A stretch of 63,719 bases of DNA, filler included, from Octopus bimaculoides (taxonomy: Eukaryota): assembly GCF_001194135.2 (NCBI RefSeq). It is 5 parts of 5 records of this genome, joined end to end, with 100 filler letters (N's around TTAATTAATTAA, not from the genome) between each part and the next. Parts side by side here need not be neighbours in the genome. Positions count along the whole stretch, not along the records: positions 1 to 10,400 come from NW_026386354.1; 4 more parts are not named here. One strand, written 5' to 3'. Positions 1 through 11,824 of this stretch are shown piece by piece (the stretch's first letter is position 1; every line of letters begins with the position of its first letter). The position numbers and the translations under genes were made by a program. The notes below the pieces were generated by a model. That model had not been told where the DNA came from and did not search any database. It was given only the letters and a program-made list of their open reading frames with translations.

Positions 1-145
1 ATATATATATATATATATATATATTTTATATATATATACACGCACAGAGAAACACACGTGCACACACACATATACAAACGCAGACAGTATACATATAACT
101 CAAAAACAAAAACAGTTCATGAAAAGAAAGCATTAACTCCTAGTA

Positions 146-302
146 CAATGGTTTCCAACCTTTTCACTACCACGGACCCCTTTTATTTCAATGAATTCTC
201 CCACGGACCCCAAGATATTGAAAGGTCTGTACAGGGCCTCCGCCCCAAGTACTACCTTTCCGGACCACGAGGGGTCCGCGGACCACAGGTTGGAAACCAC
301 TG
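146..302. mobile_element. hAT (Charlie-like) MITE, 157 bp
   Basis: TIRs CAATGGTTTCCAACC (146-160) and GGTTGGAAACCACTG (288-302). 8-bp TSD TCCTAGTA (138-145) / TTCTAGTA (303-310) with one mismatch. 8-bp CTAG-centred TSDs are typical of hAT-Charlie elements. Confidence 0.8.
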
Positions 303-319
303 TTCTAGTACTTACATGT

Positions 320-357
<38 letters not shown>

Positions 358-1074
358 NNNNNNNNNNNNNNNNNNNNNNNNNNNNNNNNNNNNNNNNNNN
401 NNNNNNNNNNNNNNNNNNNNNNNNNNNNNNNNNNNNNNNNNNNNNNNNNNNNNNNNNNNNNNNNNNNNNNNNNNNNNNNNNNNNNNNNNNNNNNNNNNNN
501 NNNNNNNNNNNNNNNNNNNNNNNNNNNNNNNNNNNNNNNNNNNNNNNNNNNNNNNNNNNNNNNNNNNNNNNNNNNNNNNNNNNNNNNNNNNNNNNNNNNN
601 NNNNNNNNNNNNNNNNNNNNNNNNNNNNNNNNNNNNNNNNNNNNNNNNNNNNNNNNNNNNNNNNNNNNNNNNNNNNNNNNNNNNNNNNNNNNNNNNNNNN
701 NNNNNNNNNNNNNNNNNNNNNNNNNNNNNNNNNNNNNNNNNNNNNNNNNNNNNNNNNNNNNNNNNNNNNNNNNNNNNNNNNNNNNNNNNNNNNNNNNNNN
801 NNNNNNNNNNNNNNNNNNNNNNNNNNNNNNNNNNNNNNNNNNNNNNNNNNNNNNNNNNNNNNNNNTATTACAATTTTAAGGTATGTATGTATGTATGTAT
901 GTATGTGTGTATTTATCTTCATCGACAATCGTATTTGAAGATCTACTGTCTCTTCCTGGTTGAATATTTTTTCTGTTTGTTCTTGACCGCATTTCTGTGC
1001 CTTAAGGCAAGCCGATACGTTTACTTACATAGAACAATTAGAAGACATGAAATAAAGACTAGGAATATACACAC

Positions 1075-1706: not shown

Positions 1707-3073
1707 TTGAACGGTCTTAGACGGGTCATTAAAAAGTAATTAAACAAAAAACAAATACAAAAGGGATTGCCATGGTTGGATCAGTGGCTAAACAGCAACA
1801 TCAACTACTACTACTACTAATACTACTACTATTACTACGACTGGTGTTGATGCTGCTGCTGCTACTATTGCGCATGCTAATTCTACTTCTATTACTAATA
1901 CTGCCATCACCAATAACAGTGAGGATTATGAGGATAGTGACGATTATGATGCTGATGATGCTGACGGTGAGGTGGTGTTGGTGGGAGTAATGATACTAAA
2001 GCTAAATCCTACAAAGGATTAGACTCTGGTTTTCTTCTGACTCTGCCAATCTGGTCGACTCTCGTCCAGCTGACTAATATCAAATTCCAACGACTTAAAG
2101 TCAATGTTAGAAAAACGCGTGATCTTATAACTGTAAAGAAAGTGGGAGAGAGAGGGAGAGAAAGGGCGATAAATAGATAGAGATAGGGAGATACAAAGAG
2201 AAGGCTGAGAGAGTGACAACGAGAAAGTGTGAGAGAGAGAGAGAGAAAGAGTAAAAAGAAAGACTGAAAGAGTGAATGGGAAAGCGGACATTTTGGAAAG
2301 TCTGTGGAGAACGTACACAGGCAACTGAAAAGGAGAGGGGCCGTATTATAGAAGGTAAGGGGACAGATACAAAAAAGTGAAAGACAGAAAGCCTGAACTC
2401 TTTAAGTTTAGGGTGGGGCGTACATTGGAGGGTGAAAGATAAGGGGGGGGGTCATATTTTGGAGGGTGGAGGGAGAAATATACTGGAGGAAGTAACACCG
2501 AACGAAAAGGTATGTTTCATGTTACAGAGACATATTCTAAGTCTTCGAATAAATGGTTCTTTTTCGGGTTGCCGTCCCCTTTGACACCTAGGCCACATAT
2601 CTAGCACCTCTCACCCCAACTAACCATCACAAACATACACCTTTTTCTGAAGCAAATTCAAAGCAACTGTATTTCATAAATAAAACTTTACCTAACGAAC
2701 CCATTATTTTGTGGGTTTACATGAATCGCTACCTCATTATGATCCCAATTTTTTTACTTGAATCACTACGCCAATATCACTCCACTTTCCCTCAACGTGT
2801 CCTTGGAACTTTCCACCGCCCTAGGGTGGGCAATACCATCCACTTTGGGAACCGCTTGATCTTCGAAGTTATGCGCTTATTTAATGAAAAGACATAACAG
2901 ATTCGGTGGGGTAGTGAATGTGCGTGTGCGCGTAGAGAGAGAAATTATGGAAGTGAAAAGAGGAAAAGAAAGTAAGGGTAGGTAGAGAAAGAAAAAGCGA
3001 GAAAGAGAAAGAGGAAAAAGGAGAGTAGGAGAAACTGATGTACAGTATATAGATTTATTAGTAAACAGGATGA

Positions 3074-3119
<46 letters not shown>

Positions 3120-3494
3120 NNNNNNNNNNNNNNNNNNNNNNNNNNNNNNNNNNNNNNNNNNNNNNNNNNNNNNNNNNNNNNNNNNNNNNNNNNNNNNNNN
3201 NNNNNNNNNNNNNNNNNNNNNNNNNNNNNNNNNNNNNNTATATATTTATATATGAGAGAGTGAGAGAGAGAGAGAGAGAAAAAGATAGATCGATAGCTAG
3301 ATATTAATATACAGGCATACACGCGCGCGTGCACACACACACACACACACATACATTTACACACACATATTATATATGCACATATATTTAATATACATTA
3401 TACAGATATATATATACATACGTATATATATGTATATATATACATACATATCTTTCTATTTGCCTATATATCTGAGCGCGTGTATGTATGTATG

Positions 3495-3561
<67 letters not shown>

Positions 3562-4413
3562 GTATAGATACACAAACACATATACACACACATATATGCA
3601 CGCACGCCTATACATGCATGCAAATATAGGAAAACTCTGCGAAATCCGTTCGTAATTCCTGTCACGAACTCAGTGGCATTAGCTTTCAACATAATGCACC
3701 TTGTCTGGGACTAATTTTTCATAGTTTGGTCACACTTTGCAAATACACACACCACACACAGAAGCGCAAACTCATGTGCGCATATGAGAATACTTGGGCA
3801 GGAACATACTCACACACGCACACGTATATAACTGACCTATGTACAGAACACACACACACACACACACATATATATATGTGATACACAAAACCATAGACCC
3901 ACACACATGAGAGTAATAAATTCTTGACAGTTGATGATGACATACAATTATAAGATATTGCAGACTGGCCGTCGTTATGCAGCAAGAGTTAAAACCACTT
4001 GCATTCTTACGTGTCAATAACGAGAAATCAACTCAGCCATATAACATACTAGAAATAGATGCTAACTCCTCTTCGCAATACACGTAGCAAAAGTTTGAAG
4101 CAAGTAATCATACATACGCCTCTTTCCCTATTTCTGTCCGCGTAATTCTTTCAAATTTTTTTTTAAATACAAGGCCAGCAATTCCTTGAGGAGGGGAGAG
4201 TTTCATTGCCTTATGTTTTTTCGCAGCTATAAGTGGCTTAACTGCTATTTCTAGCCATACATATGTGCTTATAGTACATACAATCACAAATATTGACGAA
4301 TAAATGTTGCCTATATAGTTTATATCTCGCCCAGTTGCCCGCGTTAATTTTACACTATATGATTTGGCATTTCGTTAAATTAGACATTATATATATGTGT
4401 TTATGTATGTTTG

Positions 4414-4444
<31 letters not shown>

Positions 4445-4952
4445 GCATGTGTGTGCATGTATGTATGTACAGTGTTCCGGTCAGTTTCTTGTTACGAAGT
4501 CTCGCAACTTGGCTGAAGACCCTGTGTAGCCACAGAGGAAACTCAGAGTTGCAAGAGACTGACTGTACGATAATAAAAATGTTATTAACCTTTACGATGT
4601 TACCGAGTACTCATTTTTCCGACAGTCAACTCTAAATGCATGTATGTATGTATGTATGTATGTATGTATGTCTATGTCTCACACTCTTAAGATATTTCTT
4701 ATAGTTCTGTTAGGAAGAATAAAAAATATAATAAATGCCGTAGTCAATGAAAAGCGATATGGATTTAGGGACAACAAAGGCACGAGATGGCATACTTTGA
4801 TTCAAACACTAAAATAAATACAAATACAGAAAGACCTATTTGCTTGGTTCGTAAATTATACCAAAGTATTTGACTGCATACACAAGTGAGTCCATCATCT
4901 CAATAGAAAAAAATGTCGGCTTAAATGGAAAGAGCATCAGATTTATCTGTGT

Positions 4953-5070
4953 GCTTACGGCCATATCACGTTGAGAGCACCGGTTCTCGTCCGATCACCG
5001 AAGTTAAGCAACGTCGAGCCTAGTGAGTACTTAGATGGGTGACCGCTTGGGAAACCTAGGTGCTGTAAGC
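4953..5070 (+). rRNA. 5S rRNA: 5S rRNA sequence, full length; probably a retroposed copy (A-tail, no T-run terminator)
   Basis: GCTTACGGCCATATCACGTTGAGAGCACCGGTTCTCGTCCGATCACCGAAGTTAAGCAACGTCGAGCCTAGTGAGTACTTAGATGGGTGACCGCTTGGGAAACCTAGGTGCTGTAAGC. Helix I pairs (GCTTAC/GTAAGC) and boxes A and C are present. It is followed by A6 and then a gap. The 5S identity is near certain; functionality is doubtful. Confidence 0.95.
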
Positions 5071-5391
5071 AAAAAANNNNNNNNNNNNNNNNNNNNNNNN
5101 NNNNNNNNNNNNNNNNNNNNNNNNNNNNNNNNNNNNNNNNNNNNNNNNNNNNNNNNNNNNNNNNNNNNNNNNNNNNNNNNNNNNNNNNNNNNNNNNNNNN
5201 NNNNNNNNNNNNNNNNNNNNNNNNNNNNNNNNNNNNNNNNNNNNNNNNNNNNNNNNNNNNNNNNNNNNNNNNNNNNNNNNNNNNNNNNNNNNNNNNNNNN
5301 NNNNNNNNNNNNNNNNNNNNNNNNNNNNNNNNNNNNNNNNNNNNNNNNNNNNNNNNNNNNNNNNNNNNNNNNNNNNNNNNNNNNNNNNNNN

Positions 5392-5579
5392 GGTATTTCG
5401 TCTGCCGTTACGTTCCGAGTTCAAATTCCACCGAGGTCGACTTTGCCTTTCATCCTTTCGGGGTCGATAAATTAAGTACTAGTTATGCACTGGGGTCGAT
5501 GTAATCGACTTAATCCCTTTGTCTGTCCTTGTTTGTCCCCTCTATGTTTAGCCCCTTGTGGGCAATAAAGAAATAAGAA
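5392..5579 (+). mobile_element. tRNA-derived SINE (GGCAGAAxCGTTAGC family); 5' end hidden in the gap
   Basis: B-box GAGTTCAAATTCC. Body and tail (GCCCCTTGTGGGCAATAAAGAAATAAGAA) closely match the complete minus-strand copy at 30407-30640. Confidence 0.85.
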
Positions 5580-7654
5580 TTATCTGTGTGCAATACTGGA
5601 ACCAAACGACAACCATAGAAATAGATCAAAAATTGTTAGAATCCGCAGAAATCAGAAGAGGTGTAAGACTGGGATGTGTGTTCACACCATACCTGTTTAA
5701 TATTCTACAATGTGTACGTTTTTCAAAGATTCAAATGAGATCAAGGAATCGCAATCAACAACATGAACATAAACAATGTAAGAGAAGCTGATGATTGGAA
5801 GAAAGCAATGAGATCTTACAAGAAATTATTGATGTTGGAAAAGAGATAAGTGCTAAGAACGGACTTAACTATGAAGGTAAAAAAAAGATAAAAAAGCAAA
5901 CAATGGTTATTAGAAAGAGAGAACAAAAGAAAGAAAGCATAGAAGTAGATAGACAAAAGGGTGAACAAGTAAAACTTGTAAGTATTTAGAATTAATAAAT
6001 CAGTTGAATTAATAAATCAGAAGGGTCGCTGCGTAGAAGTCACTCGGAGAATAAATAAGGCTAAAACTATTTATAAGATTGAAAAAAATCTTCACTTGAA
6101 AGTAAAGAACAATGCAACTACAATTAAAGTTGGTAAACTGTTATTTTTTTGTCAATTTTCTATGCTACGCAAAGACTTGAACCATGTACAAAGCTATGAA
6201 ATGGACTGGAGAAAATAGCTAGGCTGATTGTATGTATAAAGCACAAAGGGAAATTGTTGTGTCGACGTCCCCAAGCGAAGAAGTAGGATATACTTTGATA
6301 TATAAGAAAAAAAATTTAAGAATATTCTAAGCATATTGCTTAGAAGGTCGTGATAAAGACATTCTAAAATGAATTTATAACGGAATTAGATTATCTTATG
6401 GGTAGAAGTACATAGTATATTTTAGAGCAATAGAAAGAACTATTCTCTTCATTACGGGTGGACAACTATATGATATTGTAAAATATGGTATCGAATATAA
6501 GAGGTGATTGATTTAGCGGTATATTAAATGTATAAGGGCGTACATTCGGAAACAATACCTACACCGATTTGGGCATGTAAGCATTTAATAAATATTGCAT
6601 GGTTAAAAAAAATATACTAAAATAAGGATTGTCATATCCAGTAAATTATATAAAAAGACCTTATAGAAAAATTATTTATAAATTACAAACGCTAGGGAAG
6701 TATATGAAAAGATATACAAATGTATAAAAATATCAAATATATAGAAAATATATAAAGCATAATGGATAATTATAAATATAAAATATAATATTGTATTACA
6801 CAGTGAGTTTTATGGAGAGAGATTATAAACTCTTGATAAGCTATAGAAGCTTCACAAATGTATAAGAGGGTTTATAAATACATAAACTTAATAATATAAA
6901 ATATAAATATTTTATGAAATATGTCTTTAAAGAATGATATAAAACGTATAACAGATTAAATTAAGGATGAGTCAAAATAAAATAAGGATTATTCTATAGA
7001 TTATGATATAAATTATATTGGTATATTGAAAAGAATTCTTATATATGTTATTATAAATACCATGTAAAATACAAAAGTATATATGAACTATTAATTGAAA
7101 AAAATATAAATAAAGATACATATGAAAACGGGTTTATAAAATATTTCTAAAGTACATCAAATGCACTGATCTAGGTAGAATAATAACAGATCGTAGGGGT
7201 TACACCTTATACTTAGGGGAGGTGCAGGATTTAGTAATCCATTGTAAATTTGTTATACTATGAGGAAAGAGAACTCCAATACTGAAGCGGGGTAAATATA
7301 TGATATAATTATTAAAAGATTACAGATCGAAGGGGTTAAAATTTATTAGAAAGCAAAACGATAGAGATTTCGAGATAATAGAGGGCATGCTATGAATGAT
7401 ATGCCCCCCCCCCCCCGGATAACTTGTTCTTCCAAATCATAGTATGATATACTTATTATTATCTGCTTCTAAAGTATTTAAAGGTATGAGTAATCCTATG
7501 AACACAAGACCTAAGACCTAATTTATTATTAATCACATTTTGTTTATATCTGAATATTTCATATACCTCCTTGCAACACAGTTCACATCTATACCGGCTT
7601 TTTGCGTATGGCTATATCCTATTTTAGGCTGAATTTACTACTACTGTCTTTGGG

Positions 7655-7864
7655 TCCTCAGATTTTCGTAGATAATGTGTACCCTTAACGTAGTTCTGAG
7701 GGAGATTCGGCGTGACACAGAATGTCACAAGGATGACCCTTTTGAATTACAGATATAAATCCTTTTTGCCAAGTGAAAGGACTGGAGTATTGTGAAACAA
7801 AGTGTTTTGCTTTGGGAATTGAACTCACGACGCTACGATTATGAGCCAAGTACCACTTTCATGC
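7655..7864 (-). mobile_element. degenerate tRNA-SINE (CORE-like centre, tail shared with 59454-59840)
   Basis: Minus strand has GTGAGTTCAATTCC, a CORE-like centre and CTGTAATTCAAAAGGG..GTGTCACGCCGAATCTCCC..GAACTACGTTAAGGGTACAC. Confidence 0.6.
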
Positions 7865-8031
7865 CATACATATATACTCACATATATACATACATACACA
7901 CGTACATGCACACACACACACGTATATATAAATATACACAGATATATACATATATATACATGTATATAAACATATATATATATATACACATAAATACACA
8001 TATATGTATATGTATGTATGTATATATAAAC

Positions 8032-8062
<31 letters not shown>

Positions 8063-9283
8063 AATACACATATATGTATATGTATGTATGCATATATATA
8101 CATATATATACACATATACACACATATATATACACAAAGGTCATACAATTACACAAAGACGTGCATACGTTCCTCACACACAAACACATCACACATGTAC
8201 ATATCTACACTTGGACACGTAGACAAATTATCAAATTAACATAAACAGGATCAGCAGTATTTATTGCATTGCAGGTCAGCAAACAATTCTATTTAGAACG
8301 TCGTTGTATCTAACTTCAATTAACTTCCCCCCATTAATAAATGTAATTTAGAGTTTTAAAATAAGAAACAATTTCTTTGAAATTAATCATTAAAGAGATG
8401 AAATTAATGATATTTACTAGGCTTTATTGATCGATAATGTTTATAGGTATTTATAGGTATTCAACAGCTTTGTGAAAATCTATCTTCAGGACAGTAATTT
8501 AACTTATAAGCAAGACGAATGTAAACTGTTCTTATATATATAATATGACAATATATAAATATATGTGTGTGTTTGAATATGTATACATACATACATACAT
8601 ACACATATATATATATTTATATATATATACACATACATATGTTATCTATCTATTTATACATATATACGTTATACATGTATATATATATATATATATGCAT
8701 ATATGTGTGTGTTATATGTCTATCTATATATATGTTCATGTGTGTGCTTGTATATATACATATGTATATATATATATATATATATATGCACACACACATA
8801 CATAGACACATATTTATTTTTCTCACATCTTTTTTTATTTATTTAAAGAGATATATAAATATATTTACATATGCCCTCTCTCTCTCTTTATACATATATG
8901 AATACATATATATNNNNNNNNNNNNNNNNNNNNNNNNNNNNNNNNNNNNNNNNNNNNNNNNNNNNNNNNNNNNNNNNNNNNNNNNNNNNNNNNNNNNNNN
9001 NNNNNNNNNNNNNNNNNNNNNNNNNNNNNNNNNNNNNNNNNNNNNNNNNNNNNNNNNNNNNNNNNNNNNNNNNNNNNNNNNNNNNNNNNNNNNNNNNNNN
9101 NNNNNNNNNNNNNNNNNNNNNNNNNNNNNNNNNNNNNNNNNNNNNNNNNNNNNNNNNNNNNNNNNNNNNNNNNNNNNNNNNNNNNNNNNNNNNNNNNNNN
9201 NNNNNNNNNNNNNNNNNNNNNNNNNNNNNNNNNNNNNNNNNNNNNNNNNNNNNNNNNNNNNNNNNNNNNNNNNNNNNNNNNNN

Positions 9284-9324
<41 letters not shown>

Positions 9325-9751
9325 TAGATAGATAGATAGATATGACCCCAACAGGCCCATATAACATTCTTGAGAGTCCACACCAACAAAATAGTAAATT
9401 GGCGATTCACAGTATTATATTAAAGGCCTATAAATAAATTTTGCTTTTGATGTCTTTATTCCAAGAAACAGCTAAATTTCTTTATTTGGTGTTTCAAATA
9501 GATCAACCTAATGTGTGCAAAACAAAATAAGAATTTTGAAAGGAATACCTATAAAACTAGTTATTAAACATAGAATGGCTACGAGGGTCCAGTTGAGTAA
9601 ATTATTAATAAAAGGGGCCTATAAGTAACAAATGGTTGACAACCACTGCTTCATACTCGGGAAATATTTCCGGTCCTATCAGTGCAGAATATATTTCAGC
9701 AGCCATTAGTTCATGAGAGACCAACAATAGAATACTACGCTCACATTTAGT

Positions 9752-10006: not shown

Positions 10007-10360
10007 CTCACATTTAGTACAGCACCGTCGCTACACACAGTGACAGTGACATCCTGAATCTCCACCAGACTAGAGTCATTCGACTGATTGAAGTTACAAC
10101 ACTTTTGTATAATTTTTCTCGTTACTATCCGTGGCTTACAACCCTCCAGGCTAGCTGGGGCAATACTCCCAACACTCTAACATCTCTCATGCACTCTTTT
10201 ATCTTCGTCTCGACGTATTTGTGTCTAATGACATACCAGTCTTTATGCTAAACATTTTGCTCAATCATTCTGTATACTTATACAAAGAAGAATGCATATG
10301 TGTTGAGAAATATGTACTTCTGTTCTTACATATATTTGTTCATGAACGTGTATTTGTATA

Positions 10361-10396
<36 letters not shown>

Positions 10397-10444
10397 TGTA
10401 NNNNNNNNNNNNNNNNNNNNNNNNNNNNNNNNNNNNNNNNNNNN

Positions 10445-11154: not shown

Positions 11155-11824
11155 ACATTTTTATTTGTATGTATATATTGTACATATTGTATATATAAAG
11201 ATGTATATATGCATATATATATATATATCGATACATACATACATACATACATGCATATATATAAATATCAACAATGGACAGAGACTTTTATACATATGTA
11301 AGACCCGACATACATATAAGTATACAAACGTTTATATGCTTTTATATGTGTGTGTGCGATAAATATGTGTGTGTATTTATGTGTATGTACATATATGTAT
11401 ATATTTATATTATATAAATATGTGTCTGTGCATGTATGTGTGTAAGTATATATAAACACATCCACTCGTACACATTCACATGTACATCAAGTGGCCTCGT
11501 TACGGGACTTCTAAATAATTACAAGTCGTGTCTTGGCCCCTAAGGTTACATAAATGAATAAATAAAAAGTTTAACAGCGAAATGATGTTAATAGATTAGT
11601 TTCAAATACGTTTCCCTTTTTGTTTTTTTTTTCTCTTTCATTTTTGCTGCTTCAAGTAGATGTGTTAATCCAGAGGAAAAACGAAAATGATGTATGCATC
11701 ATTTGGTCAAACTTAACTCTCTCAACCAGTCGCTCTGTCACCTTCATCTTTCTAAACAGAGGCACATGGGATCTGAGACATCACTCTATATCCCTAATGC
11801 TACACTTCACAGATTATCAATTTA

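What the first reader, a model, noticed from the sequence alone, without database searches (positions are those of the whole stretch)
4943..5591. 5S rRNA + A-tail + tRNA-SINE bracketed by one target-site duplication inside a LINE RT: candidate 5S/SINE chimeric retroelement
Seen: TTATCTGTGTGC occurs at 4943-4954 and at 5580-5591. Its last two bases on the left are also the first two of the 5S, a microhomology typical of TPRT 5' junctions. Between the copies lie a full 5S sequence, A6, a 315-N gap and a SINE whose tail abuts the right repeat directly, with no leftover poly(A). Removing the insert restores the LINE RT frame (..IR[F/I]ICVQYWNQT..). Established: 5S-headed SINEs (SINE3) and template-switch chimeras of Pol III RNAs with retroelements are known in vertebrates. 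Inference: this is either a single chimeric retrotranscript (SINE copied first, then a switch to 5S) or a member of a 5S-headed composite SINE family with two Pol III promoters. I do not know of such a family in octopus, but I cannot search to confirm that.
Basis: partly seen in the sequence, partly recalled or inferred. Interest (0 to 1): 0.75.

Follow-up and report, generated by a model that had tools for sequence, protein, structure and literature searches.

The report
5S rRNA–SINE retrocopy in dead octopus LINE
A full-length 5S rRNA copy and an octopus SINE lie head-to-tail between one 12-base target-site duplication inside a decayed LINE reverse-transcriptase gene; they probably went in together as one chimeric retrocopy, a kind known from vertebrates, but the junction is hidden in an assembly gap that I could not fill.

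Summary
TTATCTGTGTGC occurs exactly twice, at 4943-4954 and 5580-5591. A complete 5S rRNA with no mispaired stem position (Rfam 113 bits) starts at the last two bases of the left copy and is followed by A6, not a T-run. An Octopus bimaculoides SINE ends directly at the right copy.

Removing the insert plus one 12-mer gives a sequence that aligns without gaps to reverse transcriptases. The 12-mer is therefore a true target-site duplication, and both contigs belong to one locus.

Ordinary copies of this SINE carry about 49 more bases at the 5' end. At least that much of the 315-N gap is SINE head. The 5S/SINE junction itself cannot be seen.

A single chimeric retroposition is the most economical reading (about 0.55). 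The rival is two insertions re-using the same nick, with a third repeat copy hidden in the gap (about 0.2).

A propagating 5S-headed family has no support: 0 of 13 SINE copies in 39 kb of octopus DNA carry a 5S. That sample is far too small to exclude a family.

I rate this a new member of a known kind, of modest interest.

The parts
4674..4942 (+). Left part of a decayed, frameshifted LINE reverse-transcriptase remnant (host of the insertion)
   Evidence: tblastn of RVT_1 proteins P0059, P0031 and P0062 hits 4674-4883. The joined translation aligns with RTs. Pfam RVT_1 on the stitched fragment is only E 0.005.
4943..4954 (+). Left copy of the target-site duplication TTATCTGTGTGC; its last two bases (GC) may equally be the first two of the 5S
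   Evidence: The RT alignment needs only one copy.
4953..5070 (+). Full-length 5S rRNA retrocopy starting at RNA position +1, with all helices canonically paired and box A / IE / box C regions present
   Evidence: Rfam RF00001 113.1 bits, E 6.6e-25, model 1-120, no mispairs flagged.
5071..5076 (+). A6 directly after the 5S where a gene would have a T-run terminator; the run may continue into the gap
   Evidence: No T run of 4 or more occurs in the readable bases on this strand until 5719-5723.
5077..5391 (.). Assembly gap (315 N, length estimated). It must hold about 49 nt of SINE head if the SINE is full length, plus the 5S/SINE junction
   Evidence: Gap coordinates. The missing head is inferred from the alignment with L001 copies.
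5392..5579 (+). Octopus SINE, positions about 50 to the 3' end. It has a B-box-like GAGTTCAAATTCC at 5417-5429 and a subfamily-specific 3' domain ending ...CAATAAAGAAATAAGAA
   Evidence: blastn against L001: 90% identity over 188 nt, plus 12 partial relatives. Alignment.
5580..5591 (+). Right copy of the target-site duplication. With the preceding AGA(A) it matches AGA(T) before the left copy, a 3-nt microhomology between target and SINE tail
   Evidence: 16-mer with one mismatch.
5592..5941 (+). Right part of the same LINE RT remnant, including the RGVRxGC..P.LFN motif and a degenerate YADD motif (READD)
   Evidence: Exhaustive phmmer with 5582-5791: 42 hits, best E 9.3e-13. All 8 hits checked are RVT_1. 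tblastn extents.

Best explanation
A LINE-encoded reverse transcriptase nicked an old, already dead LINE copy at AGAT|TTATCTGTGTGC. It began target-primed reverse transcription on the 3' tail of a SINE RNA. The cDNA that was finally integrated carried a complete 5S rRNA sequence at its 5' end. The staggered second cut produced one 12-bp target-site duplication around the whole 5S-A(n)-...-SINE insert.

Shown: the TSD is genuine, the 5S begins exactly at RNA position +1, and the SINE ends exactly at its canonical 3' terminus against the TSD. Both parts have the same orientation, and both flanks are one locus.

Inferred: the two parts went in together. That could have happened by a template switch from the SINE RNA to an oligoadenylated 5S RNA. 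It could also have happened by retroposition of a read-through Pol III transcript from a source locus where a SINE lies behind a terminator-less 5S-A(n) retrocopy.

The copy retains an intact-looking 5S internal promoter and no terminator before the SINE in the readable bases. It could in principle be transcribed as a unit, but nothing shows that it has propagated.
For: The 12-mer is exact and unique. A gapless RT alignment across the joined flanks shows the ancestral site had one copy. The 5S is full length and starts at the TSD edge with a 2-nt overlap. The SINE tail ends at the same position as in the only other copy of this subfamily and touches the right TSD, so there is no room for an A-rich TSD or leftover A-tail of a separate SINE insertion. 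A 3-nt target/tail microhomology (AGA) lies at the 3' junction, and L001_20839 shows a comparable 3-nt overlap (AAT). Two ordinary SINE copies in L001 have clear 11-17 nt TSDs directly against their own heads, so a 12-nt TSD fits this machinery, and a left TSD touching a 5S instead is the exception. Chimeric retrocopies with a small Pol III RNA at the 5' end, and 5S+tRNA composite SINE heads explained by a SINE-to-5S template switch, are documented (PMC4824008, PMC4758252, PMC11838501, PMC2104539).
Against: The junction is unread. The gap (estimated 315 nt) is about 250 nt larger than the roughly 49-nt missing head plus a short A-run needs, so other sequence or a third TSD copy may be there. 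The A6 after the 5S looks like the tail of an independent poly(A) retrocopy rather than a direct template-switch fusion. The canonical SINE 3' end rests on a single comparator copy. In humans, 5S/LINE-1 chimeras are mostly truncated and antisense (PMC11838501), unlike this full-length sense copy.
Confidence: 0.55

Rival explanations
1. Two sequential insertions used the same nick. One order is a SINE first, followed by a 5S-poly(A) retrocopy at the preserved left copy of the target. The other order is a 5S-poly(A) retrocopy first, followed by a SINE nicked exactly at the A-tail/TSD boundary. Either way a third full or partial copy of the 12-mer lies in the gap.
For: The A6 after the 5S is what a free-standing polyadenylated retrocopy would carry. 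After a first insertion the left copy keeps its original upstream context AGAT|TTAT, so the endonuclease site is regenerated. The nick contexts seen here are all A/T-rich. The gap is large enough to hide a third copy.
Against: This needs re-use of the same nucleotide position. For the SINE-first order it also needs a second staggered cut of the same 10-12 nt, so that the 5S starts flush with the 12-mer. No A-rich TSD or residual A-tail follows the SINE. The AGA target/tail microhomology fits SINE priming on the original target, not on a poly(A) tract.
Confidence: 0.2
2. The insert is one copy of an established, propagating 5S-headed composite SINE family (5S promoter + linker + tRNA-type SINE body, AmnSINE1-like) in octopus.
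For: There is a single TSD around the composite. The 5S internal control regions look intact, and no T4 terminator occurs in the readable bases between the 5S and 5719. 5S+tRNA composite heads exist in deuterostome SINEs (PMC4758252, PMC4824008).
Against: None of 13 SINE copies in L001 has a 5S, and no other 5S lies in the window or L001. The 5S is complete with no mispaired stem position flagged, like a fresh copy of the rRNA rather than a drifted SINE head. No report in cephalopods was found. The sample (about 41 kb) is tiny, so this is weak evidence.
Confidence: 0.1
3. Assembly artefact: the two contigs, or the 5S end of the left contig, are wrongly joined, and the 5S and the SINE are not neighbours in the genome.
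For: An unresolved gap lies between two repeat-derived contig ends. The left contig stops after only six A, and the right one starts inside the most conserved part of a high-copy SINE.
Against: The flanks continue one RT reading frame without a gap and share the exact 12-mer at the element borders. Two different LINE copies hit at the same 12-mer by two different elements would be needed.
Confidence: 0.05

Closest known systems
LINE-mediated chimeric retrocopies (U6/L1, 5S/L1, U3/L1, Alu/L1; template-switch or RNA-ligation chimeras; tripartite chimeras in Magnaporthe)
   Same: A small Pol III RNA copy at the 5' end and the 3' end of a retroelement at the 3' end. Same orientation, one TSD of 7-15 bp around both, and the 5' part starts at RNA +1 (PMC11838501, PMC2104539, PMC6789731).
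   Different: The 3' partner is a SINE of a mollusc rather than L1. An A-run follows the 5S. Human 5S/L1 chimeras are mostly truncated and antisense, whereas this one is full length and sense. Direct fusion is unverified because of the gap.
AmnSINE1 / 5S-headed DeuSINEs and SINE3
   Same: A 5S sequence placed 5' of a tRNA-type SINE. [quoted passage not shown]
   Different: Those are multi-copy families with a drifted, partial 5S head fused to a partial tRNA part. Here a single copy is known, the 5S is complete, and the SINE's own head may be complete too.
5S rRNA poly(A) retropseudogenes with a later SINE insertion (nested insertion)
   Same: A solitary 5S starting at +1, an A-run instead of a T terminator, and a flanking direct repeat.
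   Different: A nested SINE should carry its own TSD and leave A-tail remnants before the outer TSD. None is visible on the right side.
Octopus tRNA-type SINEs (OK, OR1 and OR2 of Ohshima and Okada 1994; OR1 or OR2 is counted as a CORE-SINE)
   Same: The 3' part is an ordinary member of the abundant octopus SINE population, with a shared head and core and 11-17 nt TSDs.
   Different: ARAGORN and Rfam do not call the heads tRNA.

Membership tests
LINE-mediated chimeric retrocopy (template-switch type) | One target-site duplication encloses both parts, and the empty site has one copy | tested here: met
   Exact 12-mer at both outer borders. The joined flanks align gaplessly to RTs.
LINE-mediated chimeric retrocopy (template-switch type) | The 5' part is a small cellular RNA starting at its +1; the 3' part is the 3' end of a retroelement; both in the same orientation | tested here: met
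   5S model 1-120 at 4953-5071 on the + strand. SINE 3' end at 5579 on the + strand.
LINE-mediated chimeric retrocopy (template-switch type) | The parts are fused directly, with no internal TSD and no internal poly(A) | tested here: inconclusive
   The junction lies in gap 5077-5391. A6 follows the 5S.
SINE3 / 5S-headed composite SINE family | 5S-derived head with box A, IE and box C | tested here: met
   Complete 5S at 113 bits. The boxes were judged by eye against the human 5S recalled from memory, not scored.
SINE3 / 5S-headed composite SINE family | Many dispersed copies of the same composite, each with its own TSD | tested here: inconclusive
   0 of 13 SINE copies in L001 carry a 5S, and there is no other 5S in the window or L001. 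Only about 41 kb of octopus DNA was reachable.
Functional 5S rRNA gene | Tandem array unit with a T-run terminator directly after the gene | tested here: not met
   A solitary copy inside a LINE remnant, followed by AAAAAA. The first T run of 4 or more in the readable bases is at 5719.
Octopus tRNA-type SINE | Multi-copy element of about 240 nt with its own TSDs and A- and B-box-like motifs | tested here: met
   13 copies in 39 kb of O. bimaculoides; two clear TSDs of 11-17 nt; shared head. tRNA ancestry itself is not confirmed by ARAGORN or Rfam.
LINE reverse transcriptase (host sequence) | Significant similarity to RVT_1 proteins on both sides of the insert, collinear | tested here: met
   The remnant is frameshifted, and the stitched fragment reaches only E 0.005 against Pfam. 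The LINE clade was not determined.

The most novel reading that the evidence does not exclude
The locus is a newborn or low-copy 5S-headed composite SINE of a cephalopod. It would have a complete 5S with a working internal promoter and no terminator, an A-rich linker, and a tRNA-type SINE that supplies the LINE-recognised tail. That would be an AmnSINE1-like family caught at its origin, and the first SINE3-type element in molluscs.
Probability: 0.1. Interest if true: 0.65.

Novelty: new member of a known kind. Interest (0 to 1): 0.35.

Why it matters
If the single-event reading is right, this is a clean invertebrate example of the step thought to create composite SINE heads: a small Pol III RNA joined to an existing SINE during retroposition. 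Here both parts and the target-site duplication are still intact. It would show that the octopus SINE/LINE machinery makes such chimeras, and it would give a defined locus to test for Pol III transcription. If the insert is two nested insertions, it is routine.

Tried and rejected
- **Window ORF look-ups:** exact look-ups of 11 window ORFs, including four that span the element borders, found none in the protein collection. No independent assembly of the locus was reached.
- **Stitched RT search:** the word-index homology search with the stitched RT found nothing. The exhaustive search was needed instead.
- **5S peptide search:** it returned only metagenome ORFs of 85% identity or less, none from octopus.
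- **Metagenome DNA scan:** the scan with the 5S-end/A-run 16-mer gave only chance hits, with no 5S around them. This was a poor use of the single scan.
- **Viral-contig scan:** the scan for the SINE core found 0 matches.
- **RT homologues:** their contigs (L122-L124) are not octopus and lack the SINE.
- **tRNA detection:** ARAGORN and Rfam do not recognise the SINE heads as tRNA.
- **Literature:** no paper prints this SINE's sequence or reports a 5S-SINE in cephalopods. The Walker and Doolittle 1983 5S paper is not held, so the 5S could not be compared with the functional octopus 5S.
- **miRNA hits:** the many mir-297/mir-466 hits are sub-threshold matches to TA/CA microsatellites and were rejected.

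Full report
**What is in the sequence.** TTATCTGTGTGC lies at 4943-4954 and 5580-5591. It occurs nowhere else in the window, even with one mismatch allowed, and none of 200 dinucleotide-preserving shuffles gave two matches.

Rfam places a complete 5S rRNA at 4953-5071 on the + strand: 113.1 bits against a gathering score of 38, E 6.6e-25, model positions 1-120, with no non-canonical pair flagged. The first two 5S bases (GC) are the last two of the left repeat. After ...GCTGTAAGC come six A (5071-5076) and then 315 N (5077-5391). A gene would have a T-run there. On this strand the first run of four or more T in the readable bases after the 5S is at 5719-5723. The 5S is therefore a solitary, RNA-derived copy and not a gene of a tandem array.

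**The SINE.** Searching a six-frame translation of 5392-5579 gave one hit, a kelch-like protein 10 isoform of Octopus bimaculoides. Its genomic locus, L001, is 39 kb of GCA_001194135.2 chromosome CM046612.1.

- L001 holds 13 blastn matches to the window's element. One is 90% identical over all 188 nt (L001 4794-4607). The others share the first ~120 nt but have a different 3' domain.
- In the eight L001 copies aligned, GGTATTTCGTC (window 5392) is preceded by about 49 nt of head, roughly AAGGCGGCGAGCTGGCAGAAnCGTTAGCACGCCGGGCGAAATGCTTAGC.
- The window's SINE is thus cut by the gap at about its position 50. At least that much of the gap is SINE if the copy is full length.
- The same-subfamily copy ends ...CAATAAAGAAATAAAAA before its flank. 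The window copy ends ...CAATAAAGAAATAAGAA and then runs straight into the right 12-mer. No spare A-tail or A-rich repeat is left there.
- Two ordinary copies show clear TSDs directly against their own ends: L001_20839 with 17 nt and one mismatch, of which 3 nt overlap the SINE tail, and L001_11656 with 11 nt and one mismatch.
- ARAGORN and Rfam do not call any of the heads tRNA. The tRNA ancestry rests on the literature (Ohshima and Okada 1994, cited in PMC4758252) and on box-like motifs, not on a test here.

**The host and the empty site.** The stitched flank translation reaches only E 0.005 against Pfam RVT_1, and the word-index search found nothing.

An exhaustive phmmer search with 5582-5791 then found 42 proteins, best E 9.3e-13. 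All eight hits that I scanned are RVT_1 proteins. With the insert and one 12-mer removed..YTKVFDCIHK.SIISIEKNVGLNGKSIRFICVQYWNQTTTIEIDQKLLESAEIRRGVRLGCVFTPYLFNIL.. aligns without a gap across the junction to P0031, P0053, P0034, P0042 and others. tblastn puts consecutive parts of the same proteins on 4674-4883 and 5558-5941.

Three things follow. The ancestral LINE had one copy of the 12-mer, so the repeat is a genuine target-site duplication. The two contigs are neighbours in the right order and orientation. The LINE copy is old, with frameshifts, stops and READD in place of YADD, and it is only the landing site.

**The gap.** I could not read across it. None of 11 window ORFs is on record in the protein and contig collection. 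Whether the 5S A-run meets the SINE head directly is therefore unknown. The estimated 315 nt exceeds what the ~49-nt head plus a short A-run needs, but the estimate's error is unknown.

**Mechanism.** The right junction, where the canonical SINE end meets the TSD, shows that target-primed reverse transcription started on a SINE RNA at this nick. It also carries a 3-nt AGA match between the target and the SINE tail. The left junction shows that the integrated DNA ended with position +1 of a 5S RNA, with 2 nt of microhomology.

The simplest account is one event, and it could have arisen in two ways:
- a template switch from the SINE RNA to an adenylated 5S RNA;
- retroposition of a read-through transcript from a source locus where a SINE lies behind a terminator-less 5S-A(n) copy.

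Comparable chimeras, and the SINE-to-5S switch proposed for 5S+tRNA SINE heads, are documented (PMC11838501, PMC2104539, PMC4824008, PMC4758252, PMC5786205 as cited in PMC11838501).

The A-run is the awkward fact for a plain switch, and it fits a free-standing 5S-poly(A) retrocopy better. Two sequential insertions remain possible, but both orders need the same nick to be used twice. They also predict a third copy of the repeat in the gap. A SINE landing inside the A-tail would have left an A-rich TSD and tail remnants on the right, and these are absent. I put one event at about 0.55, two events at about 0.2, an established family at about 0.1, and an assembly artefact at about 0.05. The remainder is unassigned.

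**Family question.** None of the 13 SINE copies in L001 has a 5S, and no other 5S is present in the window or L001. This bounds 5S-headed copies only to below roughly 20% of the SINE population. No paper in the library reports a 5S-derived SINE in cephalopods. The 5S looks like a fresh copy of the rRNA, complete and with no mispaired stem position, rather than a drifted family head.

**Verdict.** The chimera reading is plausible but unproven, and the family reading is unsupported. The kind of event is known from vertebrates and fungi. Here it would be a new member in an octopus, with an unusually intact full-length sense 5S.

Noticed in passing
L001 (O. bimaculoides CM046612.1:40585310-40624399); protein P0023, residues about 419-468: The annotated kelch-like protein 10 isoform X1 carries a ~50-residue insert (..NWYLIYRPRKDERQSGPRWNLNSEHKDRRNT) that is the antisense translation of this SINE, so a SINE has apparently been exonised in a gene model. 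No 100% match for that stretch was found in the readable bases of L001, which has 8150 N.
   Followed up: partly
L001, copies at 11656, 20839, 30912 and 32529 versus 4794, and window 5392-5579: The SINE copies share the head and core (about the first 170 nt) but carry two unrelated 3' domains...CCCCCAAAATTTCGGGCCTTGTGCCTAGAGTAGAAAAGAAT versus ...CCCTTTGTCTGTCCTTGTTTGTCCCCTCTATGTTTAGCCCCTTGTGGGCAATAAAGAAATAA. This suggests two subfamilies with different LINE partners.
   Followed up: partly
window 1-360, 866-1140, 3040-3620, 4390-4680, 7850-8150, 8550-8910, 9284-9340, 10320-10400: There are dense TA / CA / TATG microsatellites. All other assembly gaps (358-865, 3120-3238, 8914-9283) sit inside them. 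They also produce dozens of sub-threshold mir-297/mir-466/mir-3149 Rfam matches, which are artefacts of low complexity.
   Followed up: yes
window 5763-5800: The RT catalytic motif of the host LINE reads ..INNVREADD.. (YADD changed to EADD) and lies in a different frame from the upstream RT motifs, confirming that the LINE copy is dead.
   Followed up: no
L001 20660-20895 (minus strand) and window 5576-5583: In both cases the direct repeat extends 3 nt into the SINE tail (AAT in L001_20839, AGA in the window). This fits base pairing between the nicked target and the SINE RNA 3' end during priming.
   Followed up: partly
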